From the NCBI GenBank assembly GCA_025594325.1, contig JANHCV010000010.1, positions 1 through 64,000 on the forward strand: a stretch of 64,000 nucleotides of DNA, read 5' to 3'. Shown here in pieces: positions 52,696 through 64,000 of the stretch (positions are counted from its first letter, which is position 1; each line of letters opens with the position of its first letter). A model generated the notes under the pieces. The model was not told where the DNA came from and ran no database searches. It worked only from the letters and a program-made list of their open reading frames with translations. Source of the DNA: Blastocladiella emersonii ATCC 22665. Its lineage: Eukaryota; Fungi; Blastocladiomycota. Made by a program: the position numbers and the translations under genes.

Positions 52696-53528
52696 ATGGT
52701 ATCGACACCCACCCGCGGCGACCGATGGATCGGATCGGGCTCGAGGCCGGCGTGCTGACGCACCCCTCCCCTCCCCCGCGTCTAGTCGATTATGGCATAC
52801 AACGGAGCGTCGGTGGTGGCCATGAAGGGCAAGAACTGCGTGGCCATCGCCAGCGACCGCCGCTTCGGCGTGCAGGCGCTGACCGTGTCGTGCGACTTCC
52901 AGAAGATCTTCAAGGTCAACGACCGCCTCTTCTACGGGCTCGCCGGCCTCGGCACCGACGTGCAGACGCTGTCGGAGCGCTTCCGCTTCAAGTCCAACAT
53001 GTACAAGCTGCGCGAGGAGCGCGACCTGGAGCCCAAGACGTTCGCCCACATGGTGAGCTCGACGCTGTACGAGAAGCGCTTCGGGCCCTACTTTGTCGAG
53101 CCCGTGGTCGCCGGCCTCGACAAGAAGGGCGAGCCGTTCGTGTGCTCGACCGACCTGATTGGCTGCATCAACTTTGCCAAGGACTTTGTCGTGGCCGGCA
53201 CCGCGTCGCAGAACCTGTACGGCATGTGCGAGACCGTGTGGCGCGAGGACCTCGAGCCCGAGGAGCTGTTCGAGGCCGTGTCGCAGGCCCTGCTCAACGC
53301 CGTTGACCGCGACTGCTTGTCCGGCTGGGGCGCCGTCGTGCACATCATGTACGCTGCTTCTGGGGTGGCGGCCGCGTATCGGGCCGTGACTGACTGACAC
53401 GTTGCTCCGTGTAGCACGCCCGAGAAGATCATCACGCGGACGCTCAAGGGCCGCATGGTACGCACTGCTTACTCGCCGCACCCACCGAACAGCCCCTCAC
53501 TCGCCTCGCTCTCGCCGTGTAGGACTAG
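52696..53528 (+). CDS. PUP3: 20S proteasome subunit beta-3, 4 exons
   Basis: M|[28 protein letters not shown]...[11 protein letters not shown]...[14 protein letters not shown]...[14 protein letters not shown]|[15 protein letters not shown]|D*. Confidence 0.97.
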
Positions 53529-53625
53529 AGCACCGTGTCCATGCTGTCACGTCATCAATTGGAGTCTTTCTGTGTTCAATGGATTCACGCCCTCGTTTGT
53601 ATACCATCAGGATCCCCCTCGCTCC

Positions 53626-53999
53626 TCACTTGCTCGATGACGACGACGACGAGCTGAAGGGCGACGCAATCTCCTTTTGCGCCTCGGCCAGCATCTTGTC
53701 AATCTTCTTCTCCTTGACGGCGCCCTACGCTCGCCCGCTGAGTGTCAGTCCATGCTCGCGTTGACGCTGAACCCAACGCGCGCGCGTACCATCACACACT
53801 CGCGGTACCGCTGGAAGATCTCCTCGCACTCGGGCTTGGTCTCGCCCGAGAGGAACTTTTCCGTGTACCACTTGTTGAAGCAGTTATCGTACTCGTGCTT
53901 GAGCGGGGTGCACTCCTTGCCTGCAGCCGTGTCTCATCGCGACCCGTCAGCGATGCTCGGACCGGTCCCCGTGGCGTGAAGCGTACCGATGGACTCCAT
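53626..53999 (-). CDS. MDM35: MDM35/TRIAP1 twin-Cx9C mitochondrial intermembrane-space protein, 3 exons
   Basis: Spliced product [60 protein letters not shown]... Confidence 0.88.
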
Positions 54000-54113
54000 G
54001 GTGGATGTTGCAGCGAGTTGTTGCGCTGAAGAAGGGGCGATGGTGAGTGGAGAGGGAGCAATCGAGCATCTATTTCTTTCGCTCGGGACATCAACACGCG
54101 CGCGCGTCCGCCA

Positions 54114-55957
54114 TCACCGCGCGCCCGCCATCCTCGGCTCGCCGCCGGCCGCGTCCGCCTCGACGACGGCCGCCATCTCGAGCGTGAGCATATCGACGCG
54201 GAGCGCCGCGAGCACGTCGTCCTCGCTGTCGCTGTCGGTGTGCGGGTCGAGCACGCACAGCGGGAAGACGCCCTGCGCGCCCGTCGCGACGTCGACGCCC
54301 CACGCCCACGCGTCCGAGTACATGCGCGTGACGGCGACGCGCGCACCGCGACGCAGACTCACCTCGTCGTCGCGCGCCGCGTCGAACGCCACGCTGACGC
54401 GGCGCAGACCGCGGAGGACCGCCGTCGTTCCGCCCCGGTGCGCGCGCGCAGCGAGGTACCGCGGCAGCGTCGTTGTCACCGAGGGCGTTGGAGATAGCGG
54501 CGACAGGGCGGGGCTCGGGTCGACGGCAGCAGCAGATGAGAAGAAGTAGGAAGAGGTCGGCGACGTCGTTGGCGGCCGCACAATCGACCCGCCGACCGTC
54601 GAGTCGCGCCGCGACAGCGTGCGGTGGCTGAGCCGGGACAGCGGCGGGTCGCACTCGTCGTCGTACTCGTACTCGTCCTCCTGCTCGACGAGGTGCGGCA
54701 CCGCCATGAGCTGCTGCGCCGGCGGCAGCGACGCTCCGGGCGCGACCGCGACGCCGATCGCACGCGACATGAGCTGCGGCGTCCCGATGACGAGGGTCGT
54801 GTTGGACGAGGACGGGCGCGGGGATCTGGGGCCTGCGCCGGCCTGGTCGTGCGACAGGTTCTTGGCGTGGGCAGTAGTAGCCGACGGGACGCTGGCGTAC
54901 AGCGCGCTGCCGCTGCTGCCTCGCTTGCTGGCGCTCCCTGCGCCATCGTCACCGTCGCGTTGTGACGGGTGCGTCAGCGTCGTGCCCGACAGGGGCATCA
55001 CGGACGGCACCGCCGCCTCGCCCGCCGCCGCGCGGCGGTCGAGGCTCCCGAACCACCCGTGCGGGAACAGGAGCGAGTCACGGCGGTCGGACCCGTCGCC
55101 GCGGGACGGTGCTGCGCCGCTCGTGCGCCGCGAGTCGGTTCCAGCCGCCGCCGCCGTCTTTGCAGCAGCTGCTGCCGCTGCGCCGACGAGCGCCGCGCAC
55201 TCTGAAGACAGGCACGGAGGTGGCGGTGGCGCGGACGGATCGCCCGCACTGCCGCTGCCGGACTTGAGGGGATGGTGGGGGTGGCGGTTCGCGCGACGGG
55301 TGCGGCGGCGCCGGTGGAGGACGACGAGCGCGATCGAGCCGAGGAGTACGAGCACCGCGGCGCTCGCGCCCGTCGCGATCACGCCGATCTCGCTCGACGA
55401 CAGGCCGCCGCTGTCCGAGTCGGCGGACGTGAGCGACGGCACGGCCGAGGGTGCACCGACGTCGGTCTGCGTTGGCATGGGCGTCGCCAGCGGGTTGGTC
55501 GGCGGGGTTGCCGTCCCGCGAGCCGTCGCGCGGAGCGTTGCAGCGACGGGCGTCGGCGTCGTGCCGGGCTTCCACGGGTACTGCACGCCAATGTCGCGGC
55601 ACTTGCCCGCGGCCTCCCACGCGCGCCAGTCGCCCTGCGAGTCGACGCAGTACAGCGCCTCGGCCTGCTGCCGGTTGAGCGTCTTGCCGTCCTCGATGTA
55701 GATGCCGCCGGGCCGCGCCTCGATCGGCCCGCACGCGCCGTACTGCGAGCAGCACTAGATGCAGCGAGAACAGATCAGCGCCGTCTCCCACTACGGAAGC
55801 GCTCGGGCGAGGGGGGCCGTACCAGGCCGCGCGGACACGTCGAGTTGGGGTTCCGCGCGCCGCACAGCGGCTGCCCGTCGTCCGAGACGATCAGGCTGCC
55901 GGGTGCCGGCAGCCCGCGCGCGTCGCAGTCGCGGTCATCCTGCGTAACAGCGTTCAT
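54114..55957 (-). CDS. Receptor-like protein A: hevein/CBM18-like ectodomain, TM helix, C-terminal SH3 domain
   Basis: Exon 1 ...LCGARNPNSTCPRGL, intron 55755-55822, exon 2 CCSQYGACG...YC...DWRAW..AGKC. TM IGVIATGASAAVLVLLGSIALVVL followed by HRRRR. SH3-like RRVSVAFDAARDDEVSL...YSDAWAWG...QGVFPLCVL. Confidence 0.85.
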
Positions 55958-56259
55958 GGTGGGGTGGAGCAGAGTTTGGCGGGCGGAGAGAGAGGAAGGC
56001 GCGCGGGCGAGTGTCGTCGGTTTGGTCCGCCCGCTTTGGCAGGGCGTTCAACGCATGCGCGGCTCCCCCGATCACAGACGCCCTCCAAGGCGGATCACGC
56101 CAAAGATCATGTAGATCCCACCGCAGCCTGAAAAATTCTCCTCTTTGCCAACGCGTCCTGCCAGCTGGGTCGTCCACCTTACATTCGCGCCGTTCATGAC
56201 CACGTTACAAAGTTTTATTCAAATCAGTTACAGCCTGCACCTCGCAACAGACGCGGTAC

Positions 56260-57947
56260 TCATTTGTACTCGAACATGACATGGACCGGCGCCCGCATTA
56301 CCCGGCCGCCGCCCAGCACCCTAACGGGTCGAGGCCGCAGCGCCTCGAGCAGTTGGAGGTCAACGGCCGTGAGCGGCGCCTCTCCGTCCGCAGCGCGAGG
56401 AGCTGACGCAGGATCAGAGGGTGCCACGGGCGCTGGGCGCGCAGCAGGCGCAAGGTTCGCTTCGGCGGGAGCTGCTGCGGCCGCCATCGCCGACGAGGAC
56501 GAAGCCGAGGAAGCGGAAGCGAACGCAGCGAGCGTGGCGTCGTCCTCCTTGAACAGCTGGACGAGCGTCTTGGGGTCCGACGCGATGAGCTTCGCCTTGG
56601 AGGAGCTCTCGACGAGCACCGCGCTTCTGCCGCCGCCCAGCGACGCAAGACTCGTGTAGAAGAGATCGAACGGCGAACTCTCACCCGCGGCCGTGGCAGC
56701 TGCAGGCGACGCGGGCGAGAACTGGTCGTCGAGCGGCGACAAGAGGCTGACCGGGACCACGACCACTTCCTGCGGCTGCTCGGACGGCGTGGTAGCCTGG
56801 GACTCGTTGCAGGTGAGCTCCACGTTAGTTTCGGCGTCCACCTGACGCTCGAGAACCGACGACTCGGAGATCTGCGACAGGGCGGCGTCGCGGGACCGAG
56901 CCGGATCGCGCGTCGATGCCAGCGGGGTGGCCGCGTCGGGACCGGACGGCACAACGCCGAGATGGATTGCGGGTGCCGTGACGATTGTATGGTTGACAAA
57001 CTGCCGGAGCGGGGGCAGATACAACGGCTGCTTCGCGTCGATGACCGGCGAACGGATGTTGAAGCTCCGCGGCAACGAAACCGCCTTTGGTCGCCGCGGC
57101 AAGGCGCCGTACAGCCGGCGCAGCGTCAAGGAGACGAAGCTCTCGTGAGGTTTGCCAGCCGCCGGCGATCCAGGGAGCTGTTCATCTTGGCTGGGCACCG
57201 CACGGACGCCTACAGGGCGTTGGCGGCGAGACGGATCAAGGCCACGAGAGCGCAGGAACATGCCCGCGGCCCCCACCGCAACGGCTGCGACGACTACAAG
57301 ACTGACGACTGCGATCGTCGAGAGGCCGCCGTTGTTTGGGGCGACGGTAACGACGCGATCACCAACGGCGCCGCCAGTGCTGGTCGTACCGCTGGTTCCA
57401 TAGTCGCCGCTCGATCCACCACCACCAAGTGCAGATCCGTTCGCGCCCGGCCGCAGCCCGGTACCCGAGCCCGCAAGCTTCGACGGCGGCCGCTCGCCGT
57501 TGGGCCACGGATACACGGCGCCGCCGAGCGCCGAGCACTTGCCCGCGGCAGTCCATCCACGCCAGTCGCCGGCGATCTTACCGGTACAGAACGCGGCCGT
57601 GGCGGCGGCCTTGGTGATGACGTTACCGGTCGTGTCGACATACTCGCCCGTGGCGCTAGCGACAGGTCCACACTGCCCGATCGCGCTGCAACGTCAGGAA
57701 GAAGTTAGCCGACTTCCAATTCTGCCACCGTTGACGCGTTCACGCGCACCTGCATCACTACAAACACGCGAAGCTGTCGTCAGCAAACGAGTCGGGCCAA
57801 TCGGTCTTAGGTCTGATGGCGCACCTGATCCTGAAGGCAAGTTACGGTCGCGTTGCAGATCGGGACGCCGTTTGCCCCGAACACGAGCTTCGTGGCAGGT
57901 TCCGGAAGCCCGGTCTGGTCGCACTGCTTCTGAGAGAAGCTTGCCAT
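56260..57947 (-). CDS. Receptor-like protein B: hevein-like ectodomain with an in-frame TGA in an 8-nt micro-exon (nonsense allele, pseudogene or recoding)
   Basis: Exon 1 57825-57947 (41 codons), micro-exon 57750-57757 (TGATGCAG), exon 3 from 57685 in frame with ORF 56260..57516. TM helix present. Ends RPRPVRVLGGGRVMRAPVHVMFEYK*. Confidence 0.75.
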
Positions 57948-59164
57948 GATGGGAAGGGGTGCGAATGTCGTGAATCGGGAGCGAGGGTCGAGTTTCACAT
58001 CGCGGCCGCGGTGAGCCCGTGTTGGCAGGTGCGGGAAGCCCGACCGCACGCACCGCAGGAATCACGTTTAGCACCGTATCGCAAAACAGGATGAGACAAT
58101 CATCCAGCCACTCGGGCTCTCCGTTGCAAACATGTTCAGGTCGGCTGTTGCGGGGCTCGTGGAAATGTCAAGTTGGCGAGCGGCATCAGCTGTCCATAGC
58201 AAGACGTTCAAGCTATCGCTCACTTCATTTTGCCATGTGAGGTGTCAGGGGAGCTGACGGCCGCGAGTTCGTCAAGGGTCGTGATCGGCGCGGTCACGCG
58301 GACGTGAGCAGCGCGTCCTCGCCTCGGCGCAGCCTCGCATCACGTGATACGACTTAGACGTCTAAATTCGAGATGCACCATAAACTTTGGCCTCGCCAGT
58401 CGTGCACGGCCCGGCGTTGCCGCCGCCCGCCCGGCCTGATCCGCCGCCGCCGCGGCGGGCGCCCCTCACCCGCGCAAAGCGCGCGGCCGATGGCTACGCA
58501 CCGTGCTGTCTTGCCCCGTTCGCTGACCCTGACGATGGGTGCTGCGCCGCGGGAAACCCGCGGCGAAAGGCAGTGGCCCTCGCTGACGCAGCGGTGGCCT
58601 GCCGACACAACGGCGGAACCCTCGCTGCGCACCCGGCCCTCCGACCAGCATTCGGGATCCCCGTCAACGACGACGGCTCCCCGCTGACCGTCGGGCCGGC
58701 CCTGACCCTTTTTGACCCCCTGCATGGCTCGTGGATCGACGCCCGCGTCGCCCCGCGACTCGGCGACTGGCAAGTCGCTGAGGACCCTGGCTTCCCGCCA
58801 GGGCCGCCGTAGCGCATCCCTGCACCACCGGGCGCGTCTGGACTAGCCCTAGTCTAGCTCGCGCCTGGAGGGTGTGCAGCGACATGCGCTAAGCTGCGGA
58901 GCACGCTCACACGCTCCGCTACCGCCAGGTGGGTCGAGATTTGGGGCAGCCGGGTTGGAGGGTTCTCGGCCTCGGGCTGGTCTCCCTGCCAGCCTCCCTG
59001 CCTCCGCGCGCGCCCAGCCCCATAGGTTTTTCTCCTGTTGTGCTGCCGTTCGTGAGCTCTGTTTGGTGACTGTGTGGTGACGATGAGTCGTTTTTGTCTT
59101 TCCTTTGCATTTTTCCTCCTCTAGCACGTGAATACACCTGGGCGAATTTTCAAAAAAAAAAAAT

Positions 59165-59430
59165 GCACCATAAACTTTCTTCTGAGCATTGTATCGTGAT
59201 CAGGGGACATCAGGGACCCCAGAAATGCAAAAATCTCCGAGTCGAAGTGTCGGGGTGTCGAAAAGTTGTCCGAGCGTGCAAAGTTGAAAAAAACTTTTGG
59301 TTTGGTCGTTCGGACGAAATCGGCCCTTTCTTGAATTCCACCCTACCCTTGACTTCGCTGAAACTTTGCATGTGATCTTCACATGAGTTATGGGCTATTT
59401 TAGCGCCATGGAAATAATTTTACGGTTTAA
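59165..59430. repeat. AT-rich dispersed repeat, copy 2 (inverted relative to 13490-13810)
   Basis: The reverse complement of 59357-59430 (ccgtaaaattatttccatggcgctaaaatagccc...gaagatcacatgcaaagtttcag) aligns with 13494-13560, in addition to the 59195-59255 block. Confidence 0.75.
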
Positions 59431-59574
59431 TTTGCGTGCTCTGGCGGACGGCGGTAAGTTAGCTTCAGTAATTGCGCTCGGCCGCGGCTTGCTCGGAGCT
59501 CGAGCGCGTTTTGGACTGTCAGCGACCGAGAAGCTCGCATAACGTTGTCAGTCATCTAAGATCATGTATTACAC

Positions 59575-60825
59575 TTACTTGTACTCAAACACAACGTGGG
59601 GAGGCGCGCGCAGCTTCACGCCGGCGCCCTGCACCCGCACGGGCCGCGGTCTCGCGGCTTCGAGGGCCTGAATCTCAACGGGCGTGAGCGGGGAGAAATC
59701 GGACGCAGTGTCAGCGGTCGTCGCGCTTATGACCGAGGCGGCCGCGCCGAGGAGCGAGGTCGCCTCCGGAGCATGGTCAGCGCGGTGGGCGGATGCGTAA
59801 TCGGGGATGAAGGACGAGATTTCGGCGGCGAGTGCTGCCGCTTCCTCCTCGTCCTGTACAGCGCCGGGATCCGAGACGACGACTGCCACTTTGTCGATGG
59901 ATGGTGCTGCCACGGAGTGAGAGTCGGACGACGACGAGTCGCTCGAGTGGTCAGGAGAAGCACCCTCGTCCTCGTTGTCGCGCGACCCGAGACTGGCATA
60001 GAAGCGCTCGAACGCGGTCATGTCGGCAGGGGCGGGCGAGTTCGAGGGGAAGCAGTCATCCAGCGGCGACAACAGGCCCACGGGAAGGTGAATCACGGCC
60101 AGCGGCGTGGCCGGCGGCGCCTCGGCCGCAGGGGGAGCAGGCGATGCGGAAGAATTGGCCCGAAGCAGCGGCGAGTCGTTGGCGAGGTTCTCGTCCACGC
60201 GAGAGGAGCGAGCAGAATCGACGCGGGCATTCGGCGCCGACTGGACCTGGCGTACGGCGGTATCCTTTGGAGAAGGGGCGCGTTGTGGAACAGGTTCGGG
60301 AAGCGTAGCCGGTGCAGCAGCGGAACGCTGTTGAAAACGTGGGTGAAGCATCGGCGTAAGCGCAGGCTCGGGGTAATACTGGACCGTGGCGGCAGTTTTG
60401 CTCGCGGGGAACGCAGGAGCGCCGTGCGCCAAGTGCGCTCCTACGTGCTGCGACACGGGTGGTTGCGCGGGAGTGTGCTGAGCGATGACGACAACATTTG
60501 GGTTGCGAGCGATTCCAGCATGTAGTGGGAGATTGGACGGTCGCGGGAACGGAACCGGCGCTGGTCTTGGCTGTGCGGTGTAAGGGGCCGACGTGGGTGT
60601 GTTGTTGGCCGCCACTGGTGCCGATCGCGTCGCAGGGAGTAAGCGAACATCGTCCGGTGTAGCTTTTGCGCGGCGCTTGCGGCAAGGACACCCGGTAAAC
60701 ATGGCGACCGCGGCGACCAAGGCTACGGCAACCACAGCGGCACCAAGGAGGACGGGGATCGAGGCCAGGTGTGCGGGAAGCGGCGCAACCCCGCCATCGG
60801 GTTGAGGAGACGCGGACGCGGTCAT
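59575..60825 (-). CDS. Receptor-like protein C: TM plus cytoplasmic tail, no hevein ectodomain seen
   Basis: Probable ATG at 60825 (MTASASPQ). TM IPVLLGAAVVAVALVAAVAMF then CPCRKRR. Shares PVxLLSPLDD...FxxFYxSL with paralogue B and the terminal RPRPV...HVVFEYK* motif. Confidence 0.75.
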   Translation of the reverse strand: MTASASPQPDGGVAPLPAHLASIPVLLGAAVVAVALVAAVAMFTGCPCRKRRAKATPDDVRLLPATRSAPVAANNTPTSAPYTAQPRPAPVPFPRPSNLPLHAGIARNPNVVVIAQHTPAQPPVSQHVGAHLAHGAPAFPASKTAATVQYYPEPALTPMLHPRFQQRSAAAPATLPEPVPQRAPSPKDTAVRQVQSAPNARVDSARSSRVDENLANDSPLLRANSSASPAPPAAEAPPATPLAVIHLPVGLLSPLDDCFPSNSPAPADMTAFERFYASLGSRDNEDEGASPDHSSDSSSSDSHSVAAPSIDKVAVVVSDPGAVQDEEEAAALAAEISSFIPDYASAHRADHAPEATSLLGAAASVISATTADTASDFSPLTPVEIQALEAARPRPVRVQGAGVKLRAPPHVVFEYK

Positions 60826-61230
60826 GGCGAGGGCAGGGGGTTCCGTCCGCGAAGAAGGAGGCGGAGATGCGTGTTGGTAGGCGTAGAGCAAAAAGCAGAT
60901 GATGCGAGGCGACAGAAGAGTTTGTTCTGCCGGTGCGAACAGTATGTTGGTCGGCCCAAGGAGGACTTTCACGTCGGCGGAAGCAGGTCGCTCGAGTCAA
61001 GAACGGATCCGGGAGCAGTTGCAGCAAGTAGGGAGCTCAATGCATTCGTTTTCGTGGCAGGAGGGGATGTGGTCGGGGAGCGGGCGGCTGCCCGCCGTGA
61101 GAGCGACCTGACCTCGCGCGACCTTCCCCGGATTCCTCGCCGGCGCTGCGCCACCACGCTTTCTACCTTTCCATCACGATCTATATCATTCTAGGGTCAC
61201 AAAAAGATCTCGGCGCGCAGGGCGAACTCA

Positions 61231-62998
61231 TTACGCCTCGCGCCGGACGGCGGGCGTGGCCAGCGGGAGGTACAACTCGCCGTCGTCCATGGCGTCCGAC
61301 CCGTCAAAACCGACGGCGGGAACGGGCCCGGCCGCCCCTTGATACTCGAACACGACGTGGACAGGCGGCCGCATCGTCTTGCCGACGCCCTGCACCGACA
61401 CGGGCCGCGGCTTGGCGGCGGTCACGTCCTGGAGCGCGATCGGCGAGTGCGGCGGCGAGGAGGGGCCGCTGGCAGCGTAGTACGGCACCGCGAGCGAGCC
61501 GGCGCTCATGGGACGAGCAGCGTGCGTGTCAGCGGCGGTCAGGTCGAGGTCCGCCTCTGCGGGACTCGGGAACCGTTGCTCCTCGAACGCCGTTGTGGTG
61601 AGCACGTCGAGCTGCGCAAACTGCAGGGGAGGAGTTGCAGCGACGGGGGCGAGCGTGAACGGCGGCTCGGTGCGCTGGGGCTCGGACGCGACCTGGTAGC
61701 CGACGCCCGCGTTGAGGTCGGGGTACACGGGACGGTGGACCGGGCCGCCACTGATCTCGCGTGTGTGCTGGTCGAGTCCCGGCGAGGCGAGCGGGACCGC
61801 GCCGTAACCGTCAGCCGCTGCCGGCGGGGGAACCAGCTCGGCCGTGTACCGGTTAAAGCGGCCGTAGGCGCCCGACGCGGCCGGCGTGGTTGAAGAGGCC
61901 GGTGTGGTCGAGGCGGCGACGACCTGATCCGCGGCGACCGACGAACCAGTCGTGAGCCGGCTCGCGCGCTTGTTCGCACGGGACGACGCAGCAGCGCCGG
62001 CCGACGAGGTAGGGGACGGGATGCGGTCGAGCGAGTGCTCGGCGGCGTAACGGCTGAAGCGGTGGTTTGCCGCTGCCGAGGAGCCAGCGTCCGAGGTCGA
62101 GACCGTCGGCGTCGGCGGCGGCGAGCTGAGCAGCTGGCTGCCGGACTGGGACGGCGGCGCGCCGCTCGGGCGGAGGGGCTGCGGCGTCTTCGGGCGGCTG
62201 CTGCCGCGGCTACGGCTACGGCGGCGGATGAAGACGGCAGCGGCCACGACGGCGACGGCAGCGAGCGCGGCGATCCCTAGGTACATGATGAGCGACGACG
62301 ACGAGGACCCGGTGCGGTTTCCGGATGAGTTGGCGGTGGACGAGCCCGAGGTGGAGCCCGTGGCCGACGGCGCGACGCTCCCACCAGCGGACGGCGAGGT
62401 ACCAGCCGAGCCGGCACCCGCTGAAGAGCCAGAGCCCGAGGCGCCCGAGCCTGTCGCAGCGATACCAGAACCAGCGCTGCCGTTCCCGTTGCCGTTCGTC
62501 GAGCTGCCACCGTTGGAGCCCGTACTGCCGCCATTGTTGTTGTTGTTGTTGGTGCTACCTCCGTTGCCGCCAGTGGTGGTGCCGGTGCCCGTGCGAGCGG
62601 GCGGCCGCACGCCGTCGGTCCAGGGGAACACGGCCCCGCCGAGGGCCGAGCACTTGCCGGCGGCGGTCCACCCGCGCCAGTCGCCCGACGGTTTGTTGCC
62701 GCAGTAGACGGCCGTGGCTTCGGCCTTGGTGACGTTCTTGCCGCCCTCGGTGTAGGTGCCGTCCGGGTTGGCGATGGGCCCGCAGAAGCCAAAGTTGCTG
62801 CAGCACTACTCGGTTCGCGGCTGTCAGCGGCCTGTCATGGTACGGTACGCCGCTGGCCCATGTACCTGGTCAAGGAGACAGGTGTTGGCAGCCGACTGCG
62901 GCCCGCAGACGGGCCGGTTCTGGGCGTCGCGGAACAGCGTCGTGGCGGGCTCCGGCAGCCCGTACTGGTCGCACTGTTTGTCGGCGAAGGCGGACATA
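61231..62998 (-). CDS. Receptor-like protein D: hevein-like ectodomain, G/S/N-rich stalk, TM helix, cytoplasmic tail
   Basis: Exon 1 MSAFADKQCDQYGLPEP...VCGPQSAANTCLLDQ, intron 62806-62865, exon 2 CCSNFGFCG...YC...DWRGWTAAGKC. TM IMYLGIAALAAVAVVAAAVFI then RRRSR. Tail contains KPRPVSVQGVGKTMRPPVHVVFEY. Confidence 0.85.
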
Positions 62999-63181
62999 TT
63001 GCATGCAGTGGCTACGTGAGCAGATCTCGCAGGGATCACTTTTGCTCGAGCCGACAGGGAGAGAGGAAGCGGTCGAGAAGTCCCGCCACATTGCCGCCGT
63101 GGCTCAGGGACCCCCGCGCCCCGAATCCAGTGTCATCAAACACGGTCTATTTTTGCGGGTATACACGACCGTGGGCGTCTG

Positions 63182-64000
63182 TCAGGGTCTGCGCTGGTCC
63201 AGCGTGAGGGCAGGGAGGTACACCTCGCGGTCTTCGGTGGTCGCCGCGGCTGGACCCTCGCGGGCGGTGGCGGCGGCGGGACCGCGGCCGGGACCCGGCA
63301 TGCCCGGCGACGTCGGCAGCTCGAGCTCGTACTCGGACGTCTCGGGTGCCGGCAGCCCGGGCGCGTGGGCAGCGGGCAAAGGCGTCGAGGCGTGGTACTC
63401 GAAGACAACGTGGACCGGTGCGCGCATGGCGCGGCCGCCGCCCTGGACCGTGACGGGCCGCGGACGAGCAGCTGCAGCGGCCTGTCCGGCGGCAGAGGGA
63501 GGCTCGAACAGCACGGGATCGGCGACCGAGACGGGTATGGAGCTGACGGGGGTGCGGTCGGGAGCGTCCAAGGGCGGCGGGACACCAAAGGGAACCGCAG
63601 GCGGGACGCCGTCGGACCGGCTCGCGCTGCTGTTGGCCGAGGTGTGGCCGCTGAGGTGGTACGGGTCAAACGACGGCACCATGGGACCGGCAATCGACGA
63701 GGGGACGGGCGAGCGCGGCGTGTGCATGTCTGCGGAGGGCGGGTGGTGCACGTCGAGCGGCATGAGCGCGACGGCCGCCGACGCGAGGCCGGCCGAGGAG
63801 CGACGCGAGCGCGAGTTCCGCGGGTCAGCGAGCAGCGCGTCGGGCAGGGCGGATGGGTCCGAGGGCCGGCGCGGGTGGTTGAGCGCGTCGTGCGGCTCGT
63901 TCGAGTAGGGCGGGGCGACTGGCGAGTGCGTCGTGATGGCGTCCGGGTCCGCGGTTGCGAGCGTGGTCGAGGACGCGAGAAGCCGGCTGTCGGGCCGCGA
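63182..64000 (-). CDS. Receptor-like protein E, C-terminal part only (5' end lies outside the window)
   Basis: Frame is open from 64000 to the stop at 63182. Contains ARPRPVTVQGGGRAMRAPVHVVFEY. Confidence 0.75.
   Translation of the reverse strand, partial: SRPDSRLLASSTTLATADPDAITTHSPVAPPYSNEPHDALNHPRRPSDPSALPDALLADPRNSRSRRSSAGLASAAVALMPLDVHHPPSADMHTPRSPVPSSIAGPMVPSFDPYHLSGHTSANSSASRSDGVPPAVPFGVPPPLDAPDRTPVSSIPVSVADPVLFEPPSAAGQAAAAARPRPVTVQGGGRAMRAPVHVVFEYHASTPLPAAHAPGLPAPETSEYELELPTSPGMPGPGRGPAAATAREGPAAATTEDREVYLPALTLDQRRP

What the first reader, a model, noticed from the sequence alone, without database searches (positions are those of the whole stretch)
54114..64000. Tandem array of at least five receptor-like membrane proteins with variant hevein (CBM18) ectodomains: candidate chitin or cell-wall sensing system
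Seen: five consecutive minus-strand genes. A, B and D share an N-terminal Cys domain with a phase-0 intron at the same position just before CCS, then a stalk, one TM helix with a basic stop-transfer and a long disordered tail. C lacks the ectodomain and E is cut by the window edge. Established: C-x(n)-C-x4-CCSxxGxCG is the hevein/CBM18 chitin-binding signature, and CBM18 is expanded in chytrids, where I know it mainly from secreted proteins and enzymes. Inference: an undescribed, rapidly diversifying family of single-pass glycan receptors that signal through protein-interaction tails, with full, truncated and possibly decoy members. Possible roles include wall-integrity sensing, substrate or host recognition, or self/non-self recognition.
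Basis: partly seen in the sequence, partly recalled or inferred. Interest (0 to 1): 0.85.

Follow-up and report, generated by a model that had tools for sequence, protein, structure and literature searches.

The report
Hevein-headed membrane protein gene array
The water mould-like fungus Blastocladiella emersonii carries six tandem copies of an uncharacterised single-pass membrane protein, found throughout its phylum, whose outer head is a stretched chitin-binding (hevein) domain and whose inner tail originally ends in an SH3 adaptor domain, which makes it a testable candidate sensor or anchor for wall chitin.

Summary
The window is from Blastocladiella emersonii ATCC 22665. The array has six minus-strand paralogues (F-E-D-C-B-A), and two of them run past the window edge.

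- **Gene models:** NCBI models for A, D, E and F equal my spliced models. B and C are not annotated.
- **Head domain:** It is homologous to hevein/CBM18. Pfam scores 27.7 bits against a cut-off of 27.8. hhalign against canonical repeats gives 97.5 %. The AlphaFold model has pLDDT 89, and its only structural matches among 48,161 PDB chains are hevein-type domains.
- **Variant form:** The head is a distinct extended form, with a 21-residue hairpin insertion, a GDWR...C closure and an extra N-terminal Cys. The same variant sits behind AA9 LPMO modules in Amoebozoa.
- **Conserved architecture:** Head without signal peptide, stalk, TM, long tail and C-terminal SH3 recur in Allomyces, Catenaria and Paraphysoderma. 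The intron before CCS is shared with Allomyces.
- **Within the array:** In B. emersonii only A and F keep the SH3. D and E lack it. B's lectin core is broken by a TGA. C has no head.

Chitin binding, topology, expression and signalling are all untested, and no RNA data were available. No paper in the library describes the family. I class it as a new variant of a known kind, of moderate interest.

The parts
54114..55957 (-). Gene A (591 aa): exon 1 55823-55957, 68-nt intron 55755-55822, exon 2 54114-55754
   Evidence: The length equals the NCBI gene call, which carries a weak Chitin_bind_1 hit.
55599..55927 (-). A: extended hevein-like head, first to eighth Cys (residues 11-97), including the intron
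55320..55382 (-). A: transmembrane helix, followed by HRRRRTRR
54249..54398 (-). A: SH3 domain, followed by the conserved helix D.VL.AL
   Evidence: Pfam SH3_1 scores 23.5 bits against a cut-off of 22.9 on the C-terminal piece.
56260..57947 (-). Gene B (not annotated): exon 1 57825-57947, putative 8-nt micro-exon 57750-57757 with TGA at 57755-57757 in place of the first Cys of CCS, last exon 56260-57685. The lectin core is broken in every reading.
   Evidence: The sequence is confirmed by DNA runs. No SECIS element was found.
57253..57315 (-). B: transmembrane helix
56266..56337 (-). B: tail motif RPRPV.V.G.G...R.P.HV.FEY at the C-terminus
58355..59309 (.). Repetitive insert between B and C. 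It is not part of the family.
   Evidence: Contig depth is 4-15 times that of the flanks in DNA runs, and GC is lower.
59575..60825 (-). Gene C (not annotated, 416 aa from the first ATG): no head, TM 60697-60759, tail motif 59581-59652. It is B-like from the TM onward.
61231..62997 (-). Gene D (568 aa, P0001, named 'Cadherin-8' in NCBI): exon 1 62866-62997, 60-nt intron 62806-62865, exon 2 61231-62805
62650..62973 (-). D: extended hevein-like head (Cys 9, 31, 40, 45, 46, 52, 79, 96)
   Evidence: Pfam, AlphaFold model, structure matches
62227..62289 (-). D: transmembrane helix, preceded by an S/T/G/N-rich stalk of about 110 aa
61342..61413 (-). D: tail motif, followed by the acidic-YLP motif. 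No SH3.
63182..64000 (-). Gene E, 3' part (458 aa in all, P0002). Its head, intron and TM lie beyond the window at equivalent 64001-64623. Tail motif at 63395-63466.

Best explanation
The region is a six-gene tandem array (F-E-D-C-B-A) of a Blastocladiomycota-wide family of single-pass membrane proteins. Shown: each intact member starts, without a signal peptide, with a head of about 100 aa. That head is a hevein (CBM18) core enlarged in three ways: a 21-residue beta-hairpin inserted between the CG and YC elements, a GDWR...C closure, and an extra N-terminal Cys. A low-complexity stalk of 15-110 aa follows, then one TM helix with a basic stop-transfer, and a disordered tail. The tail carries conserved short motifs and, in the ancestral form, a C-terminal SH3 module. 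Inferred: the TM acts as a reverse signal-anchor, so the head faces outward. There it is disulfide-bonded and N-glycosylated at a conserved sequon, and it binds GlcNAc polymers of the fungus's own wall through the retained Ser, aromatic and Tyr positions. The SH3 and the tail motifs recruit cortical proteins. The protein would then report or anchor wall chitin to the cell cortex, in the manner of yeast Wsc/Mid2 sensors and the SH3-bearing membrane scaffolds Fus1 and Sho1. D and E kept the head and motifs but lost the SH3, so they would be modulators or motif-only signallers. B and C are degenerate copies.
For: - **Organism and gene models:**
- **Hevein homology by sequence:**
  - Pfam Chitin_bind_1 gives E 3e-6 and 27.7 bits on the head of D, and 31 of 39 family members hit it.
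  - A profile search of PDB sequences returns mostly hevein lectins, 11 of 14 hits.
  - hhalign against canonical CBM18 repeats gives 97.5 %, E 6e-12.
- **Hevein homology by structure:**
  - The AlphaFold model has pLDDT 89.3.
  - All 17 matches with Z>=2 in the second look are hevein-type; the best covers 44 of 45 residues at 1.9 A.
  - All 6 matches among 48,161 chains in the Foldseek-independent search are hevein-type.
- **Origin of the variant:** One Nematostelium protein holds both the extended form and a canonical-length form with the same GDWR...C end.
- **Use as a carbohydrate module:** The variant is appended to AA9 LPMO modules that carry signal peptides.
- **Conservation:** The same architecture occurs in Allomyces, Catenaria and Paraphysoderma, with a conserved SH3 module.
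- **Outward orientation:** R/K clusters follow every TM. A sequon sits just before the third Cys in most members.
- **Tail motifs:** They are shared with Allomyces.
Against: - No binding, topology, localisation or expression data exist, and no RNA run holds this DNA.
- Pfam matches only profile positions 2-24 of 38 and stays just under the gathering score.
- Structural Z-scores are low (at most 3.7) because the domain is small.
- The aromatic at hevein position 21 is lost in E and F, and the one at position 23 is lost in A. Chitin affinity may therefore be weak or changed.
- Translocating an N-terminal region of 125-220 aa without a signal peptide is unusual.
- No partner or pathway is known.
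Confidence: 0.5

Rival explanations
1. The protein is a structural tether or organiser, not a signalling receptor. It pins the plasma membrane, or cortical actin and endocytic sites via the SH3, to nascent wall chitin. It might also act beside chitin synthase. It would start no signalling cascade.
For: E has almost no stalk, about 15 aa, which puts its head at the membrane surface where chitin emerges. SH3 domains commonly link to actin-patch proteins (general knowledge). D and E lack the SH3 but keep the head.
Against: The conserved tail motifs and the R..SL-type C-terminal site resemble regulated interaction or phosphorylation sites. Nothing distinguishes tethering from sensing computationally.
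Confidence: 0.2
2. The protein is a Fus1-like contact or fusion protein, or an adhesin. The head would recognise glycans on another cell, a substrate or a host, as in gamete fusion in Allomyces or zoospore attachment. It would not recognise the cell's own wall.
For: The overall plan matches yeast Fus1: N-out single pass, a long tail, and an SH3 near the C-terminus (PMC2063912). The family is present in sexual Allomyces and in the algal parasite Paraphysoderma. The copy-number expansion and the drifting binding residues in B. emersonii fit recognition functions.
Against: Sequence homology to Fus1 was neither tested nor found. Searches with the SH3 region found only Allomyces proteins. B. emersonii has no known sexual cycle (own knowledge). 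dN/dS is below 1 throughout.
Confidence: 0.12
3. The head keeps the hevein scaffold but no longer binds chitin. It would bind another ligand or serve as a rigid disulfide knot. In that case the CBM18 label says nothing about function.
For: The Pfam match is partial and below the cut-off. Aromatic positions 21 and 23 vary among paralogues. The large insertion and the new closure may remodel the binding face.
Against: Ser19 and Tyr30 equivalents are invariant in the alignment, and Tyr30 is nearly invariant across the family. An aromatic at position 23 is retained in most members. The same variant is attached to AA9 LPMOs, the usual context of a carbohydrate-binding module.
Confidence: 0.15

Closest known systems
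Hevein / chitin-binding type-1 domain (CBM18, Pfam PF00187)
   Same: It shares the core C-x8-C-x4-CCSxxGxCG and the Y-C element, with inferred disulfides equivalent to hevein C3-C18, C12-C24 and C17-C31. The predicted core superposes on 44 of 45 residues of a Hevea CBM18 at 1.9 A.
   Different: A 21-residue hairpin is inserted where hevein has about 4 residues. The last C37-C41 loop is replaced by GDWR...C, and an extra N-terminal Cys probably pairs with that final Cys. The domain is about 90-100 aa instead of about 40. Pfam aligns only positions 2-24 of 38. Here it heads a membrane protein rather than a secreted lectin or enzyme.
Saccharomyces cerevisiae Fus1
   Same: It is a single-pass N-out plasma-membrane protein with a long cytosolic tail and an SH3 near the C-terminus (PMC2063912). 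That it is O-glycosylated and lacks a cleaved signal peptide is my own knowledge, from Trueheart and Fink 1989.
   Different: Fus1 has a short Ser/Thr-rich ectodomain with no lectin domain. No sequence relationship was shown here. Fus1 acts in mating-cell fusion.
Yeast cell-wall integrity sensors Wsc1-3, Mid2 and Mtl1
   Same: They have a Cys-rich or glycosylated extracellular head on a Ser/Thr-rich stalk, a single TM and a cytosolic signalling tail. They sense the state of the cell's own wall (own knowledge).
   Different: They have signal peptides, a WSC domain or no lectin domain, and short tails without an SH3. No WSC or Mid2 Pfam match was found here.
Extended-hevein modules behind AA9 LPMOs in Amoebozoa (Nematostelium, Cavostelium) and in metagenomic eukaryotes; LPMO-like Paraphysoderma protein P0013
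   Same: They carry the same extended 8-Cys domain with the hairpin and the GD[WY]R...C closure.
   Different: They are secreted or GPI-like proteins with a signal peptide and a catalytic module. The domain is C-terminal, and they have no TM-plus-SH3 tail.

Membership tests
Hevein / CBM18 (Pfam PF00187 Chitin_bind_1) | The Pfam profile match reaches the gathering score | tested here: inconclusive
   The head of D scores 27.7 bits against a cut-off of 27.8 (E 3e-6); full-length D scores 24.6 bits. Only profile positions 2-24 of 38 align. Relatives with the same variant reach 28.8-32.7 bits. 31 of 39 members hit at E<=1e-3.
Hevein / CBM18 (Pfam PF00187 Chitin_bind_1) | Canonical 8-Cys spacing C-x8-C-x4-CC-x5-C-x6-C-x5-C-x3-C | tested here: not met
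   The first five Cys keep the spacing. The next gap is 26 residues instead of 6. The terminal C-x3-C pair is absent and is replaced by one distal Cys plus one N-terminal Cys.
Hevein / CBM18 (Pfam PF00187 Chitin_bind_1) | Hevein fold | tested here: met
   This holds at the level of prediction only. The AlphaFold model has pLDDT 89.3. Every structural match with Z>=2 is a hevein-type domain: 17 of 17 and 6 of 6 among 48,161 chains. Z is at most 3.7, with rmsd 1.6-2.7 A over 35-50 residues.
Hevein / CBM18 (Pfam PF00187 Chitin_bind_1) | Sugar-binding residues (hevein Ser19, aromatic 21, aromatic 23, Tyr30) | tested here: inconclusive
   D has S, F, F, Y. E has S, S, F, Y. F has S, G, F, Y. A has S, Y, A, Y. 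B is broken. Ser and Tyr are invariant in the cross-family alignment.
Hevein / CBM18 (Pfam PF00187 Chitin_bind_1) | Binds chitin or GlcNAc oligomers | not testable with these tools
   This needs recombinant protein and a binding assay.
SH3 domain (Pfam PF00018) | The profile match reaches the gathering score | tested here: met
   The C-terminal piece of A scores 23.5 bits against 22.9. F scores 22.4 bits, just under. Nine family members hit, the best at E 5e-9. Atlas neighbours are SH3 clusters.
Fus1-like membrane SH3 proteins | Sequence homology to Fus1 | not tested
   No Fus1 sequence was available from a tool. The SH3-region search found only Allomyces proteins. The resemblance is architectural only.
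WSC / Mid2 wall-integrity sensors | WSC (PF01822) or Mid2 (PF04478) domain | tested here: not met
   Pfam scans of A-F and of 39 relatives gave no such hit.

The most novel reading that the evidence does not exclude
Blastoclad fungi have a wall-sensing system of their own that is unrelated to WSC/Mid2. It would be a signal-peptide-less, lectin-headed receptor that reads extracellular chitin directly and passes the signal to an intracellular SH3 scaffold. In B. emersonii, tandem duplication would have produced SH3-less and head-less copies that tune or compete with it. This would be the first hevein-type domain known to work as the sensing head of a transmembrane receptor.
Probability: 0.3. Interest if true: 0.75.

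Novelty: new variant of a known kind. Interest (0 to 1): 0.55.

Why it matters
How fungi monitor their own chitin wall is known mainly from Dikarya, where WSC/Mid2 mechanosensors have no defined glycan ligand. A phylum-wide protein that joins a recognisable chitin-binding fold to a TM helix and an SH3 adaptor gives a concrete, testable candidate in an early-diverging lineage. In that lineage the wall is built within minutes at zoospore encystment.

It also defines an extended CBM18 subfamily that current Pfam models only half cover and that LPMOs of Amoebozoa also use.

Finally, it is a clear case of a large disulfide-rich ectodomain that must cross the membrane without a signal peptide.

Tried and rejected
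- **Shallow AlphaFold run:** A model built on the five paralogues alone was unusable, with pLDDT 44.
- **RNA evidence:** No RNA run holds this DNA. The runs that hold it are genomic DNA and read straight through the introns. No splice could be tested.
- **Selenocysteine at B's TGA:** There is no SECIS or any other Rfam match in 53500-64000. NCBI does not call the gene. I treat the TGA as a break.
- **Rescuing B by another splice:** None of 27 in-frame single-intron options keeps CCS. The canonical donor joined to an acceptor at 57672 gives an open frame but deletes CCSxxGx.
- **Hidden signal-peptide exon:** The gaps between genes are only about 185-355 nt. The start codon sits at the same place in the Blastocladiella and Allomyces copies, and the intronless Catenaria gene also lacks a signal peptide.
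- **Head remnant upstream of C:** None was found by profile search of six-frame translations.
Rejected, because F has both the motif and a separate complete SH3 about 160 residues later.
- **SH3-region search with A:** It found nothing, and A's own protein appears to be absent from that database. The same search with Allomyces P0036 found only Allomyces proteins.
- **Long plus-strand ORFs over the region:** I treat these as by-products of about 70 % GC, because the minus-strand proteins are conserved across genera.
Full report
**What is there**

The region has about 65-74 % GC and carries long minus-strand ORFs. Reading the DNA shows that genes A and D each have a 44-45-codon first exon. A canonical GT..AG intron of 60-68 nt with a CTRAC-like branch site follows, and the second exon opens exactly with TGC TGC (CCS).

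A database search with D's second exon returned one protein, P0001 (568 aa), from Blastocladiella emersonii ATCC 22665. It is identical to my spliced model, and NCBI labels it 'Cadherin-8'. I found nothing to support that name.

Fetching its contig (GCA_025594325.1, locus L001) shows NCBI gene calls of 591, 568, 458 and 668 aa. These match my models for A, D, E and a sixth upstream member, F. The array is therefore F-E-D-C-B-A and runs about 3 kb beyond the window. NCBI calls no gene for B or C.

**Anatomy**

All heads share eight Cys in register. Each protein has a single strongly hydrophobic 19-21-residue segment followed at once by an R/K cluster. None has an N-terminal hydrophobic signal.

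The stalk ranges from about 15 aa in E to about 110 aa of S/T/G/N in D. The tails cannot be aligned apart from short motifs:
- [KR]PRPV.V.G.G...R.P.HV.FEY occurs in B, C, D, E and F.
- An acidic-[YF]LP motif occurs in B, D, E and F.
- A and F carry a C-terminal SH3 with conserved flanking helices.

F has both the FEY motif and a complete SH3 about 160 residues later. The motif is therefore not a remnant SH3 strand.

**B and C**

B uses the shared donor. After the acceptor, however, the sequence reads TGATGCAG and is followed by a further 65-nt GT..AG-bounded interruption. If that 8-nt piece is an exon, the first Cys of CCS is a TGA.

Of the 27 in-frame single-intron alternatives, none keeps CCS. 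There is no SECIS-like element. Three genomic read sets show no difference there. B's lectin core is therefore broken in every reading.

C starts 22 residues before its TM, and no head remnant lies upstream. B and C align from the TM to the end at 39 % identity, with dN/dS about 0.4-0.5 and dS about 1.3. They are old duplicates that were constrained for much of their history. Whether they are still functional is unknown.

**Is the head hevein?**

Sequence evidence:
- Pfam Chitin_bind_1 matches residues 31-53 of D to profile positions 2-24 of 38. The score is 27.7 bits against a cut-off of 27.8.
- A profile of the paralogues, searched against PDB sequences, finds mostly hevein lectins (11 of 14 hits), at E 1e-3 to 10.
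- A full HMMER search of 1.84 billion representatives gave 35 hits. From these I built a 33-row alignment with eight conserved Cys and the signature CCSxxGxCGP...DGxYxE...A..LYC...GD[WY]R...C.
- hhalign of that alignment against canonical CBM18 repeats gives 97.5 % probability, E 6e-12, over 28 columns. Those repeats were themselves weak hits of my profile, so this test is not fully independent.

Structure evidence:
- With the deeper alignment, AlphaFold gives pLDDT 89.3 and pTM 0.79.
- Foldseek's top hits are hevein lectins, but at weak E-values.
- VIA-align finds Z>=2 only for hevein-type domains. The best is a Hevea CBM18, with 44 of 45 residues at 1.9 A on model residues 27-90.
- A Foldseek-independent scan of 48,161 chains again returns six matches, all hevein-containing.
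- Z-scores are low (at most 3.7), as expected for a 45-residue domain. The exclusivity of the hits and their full-domain coverage are the argument.

One Nematostelium protein (P0018) contains both the extended form and canonical-length hevein domains that end in the same GDWR...C. The variant is therefore hevein plus a 21-residue insertion. In the model that insertion is a beta-hairpin at residues 62-69, before the helix at 71-80.

By homology I infer three hevein disulfides plus a new bond between the first and last Cys. That pairing is inference, not a result.

**Binding site**

The Ser of CCS and the Tyr before the seventh Cys (hevein Ser19 and Tyr30) are invariant in the alignment. Across the wider family the Tyr is nearly invariant and the Ser is kept in most members. 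The position-23 aromatic is kept in D, E, F and most relatives, but it is Ala in A. Position 21 is aromatic in D, in A and in the LPMO-linked forms, but not in E or F. Chitin binding is plausible but unproven.

**Relatives**

The same plan (head at the N-terminus without a signal peptide, TM, long tail, SH3) occurs in these species:
- Allomyces arbusculus, A. javanicus and A. macrogynus (AMAG_11215, AMAG_14069, AMAG_13040)
- Catenaria anguillulae (ORZ36690)
- Paraphysoderma sedebokerense (KAI9138644)

All are 'hypothetical' or auto-named 'SH3 domain-containing protein'.

The C-terminal module is conserved across these genera: a pre-SH3 helix, the SH3, a D.VL.AL helix and an R..SL site. The intron before CCS is shared with Allomyces and absent in Catenaria. 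Catenaria and the inspected Allomyces locus show no tandem array, so the six-copy array is a Blastocladiella expansion.

The extended domain also sits at the C-terminus of signal-peptide-bearing AA9 LPMO proteins from Amoebozoa and metagenomes, and of an LPMO-like Paraphysoderma protein. That is the typical context of a carbohydrate-binding module.

**Orientation**

The basic clusters after every TM point to an outward-facing head. So do the disulfide-rich head, a conserved N-x-[ST] just before the third Cys in most members, and the extracellular use of the same domain elsewhere. The TM would then act as a reverse signal-anchor. This is inference.

**Selection**

Pairwise dN/dS of the head is 0.33-0.83 at 41-62 % identity. 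That indicates relaxed to moderate constraint and gives no evidence of positive selection. Strong GC3 bias probably inflates these ratios.

**Function**

My best reading is a wall-chitin sensor or anchor coupled to cortical proteins through the SH3 and the tail motifs. It would work like Wsc/Mid2 sensors and like the SH3-bearing membrane proteins Fus1 and Sho1. Fus1's plan is confirmed in PMC2063912.

It is not a member of those families. There is no WSC or Mid2 domain, and no Fus1 homology was shown. The rival readings are a pure tether, a contact or fusion protein, and a non-chitin ligand. They cannot be separated computationally.

**Known or new**

Full-text searches for the locus tags, and for hevein combined with transmembrane and SH3, found nothing. 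Other first-stage notes on this same window had already flagged the missing signal peptide, the insertion, B's TGA and gene C. I tested those points here.

My verdict is a new variant of a known kind: a CBM18 derivative in a new receptor-like architecture. Its anatomy is well supported and its function is open.

Noticed in passing
window 58355-59309: A stretch between B and C has 4-15 times the contig depth of its flanks in three genomic runs, lower GC (0.56-0.59), and several variant letters. It is probably a multi-copy repeat or transposon inserted into the array.
   Followed up: partly
window 57686-57757: In B, a 65-nt GT..AG-bounded segment ends in TGCAG, the same five letters that precede it. 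It looks like an insertion with a short duplicated target, or a newly gained intron, inside the Ser codon of CCS.
   Followed up: partly
window 61231-62997 (P0001): NCBI names gene D 'Cadherin-8'. No cadherin domain was found in it. The name seems to come from its low-complexity stalk.
   Followed up: yes
L001 7240-7440; window 61250-61413 and 63200-63466; Allomyces P0003, P0004, P0005: The tail short motifs are shared between genera. An acidic-[YF]LP[PSLA] motif occurs in B. emersonii B, D, E and F and in Allomyces, twice in the P0004 group. FEY followed by prolines occurs in the Allomyces P0005 group. The LPPLPP-like versions could be ligands for the family's own SH3.
   Followed up: partly
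P0018 (Nematostelium gracile transcript): One amoebozoan protein carries the extended hevein form and two canonical-length hevein domains with the same GDWR...C ending. This gives a natural series for how the insertion arose.
   Followed up: partly
Allomyces contigs (AMAG_11207 / AMAG_11215; GGF31_005954 / GGF31_005962): In two Allomyces species, two family members lie eight locus tags apart on one contig. This is a loose linkage that may predate the tight Blastocladiella array.
   Followed up: no
window 53626-53999 (minus) and 52792-53397 (plus): Just downstream of A lie a small UPF0203-family gene and a proteasome beta-subunit gene. NOP14 follows. These are housekeeping neighbours with no evident link to the array.
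   Followed up: no
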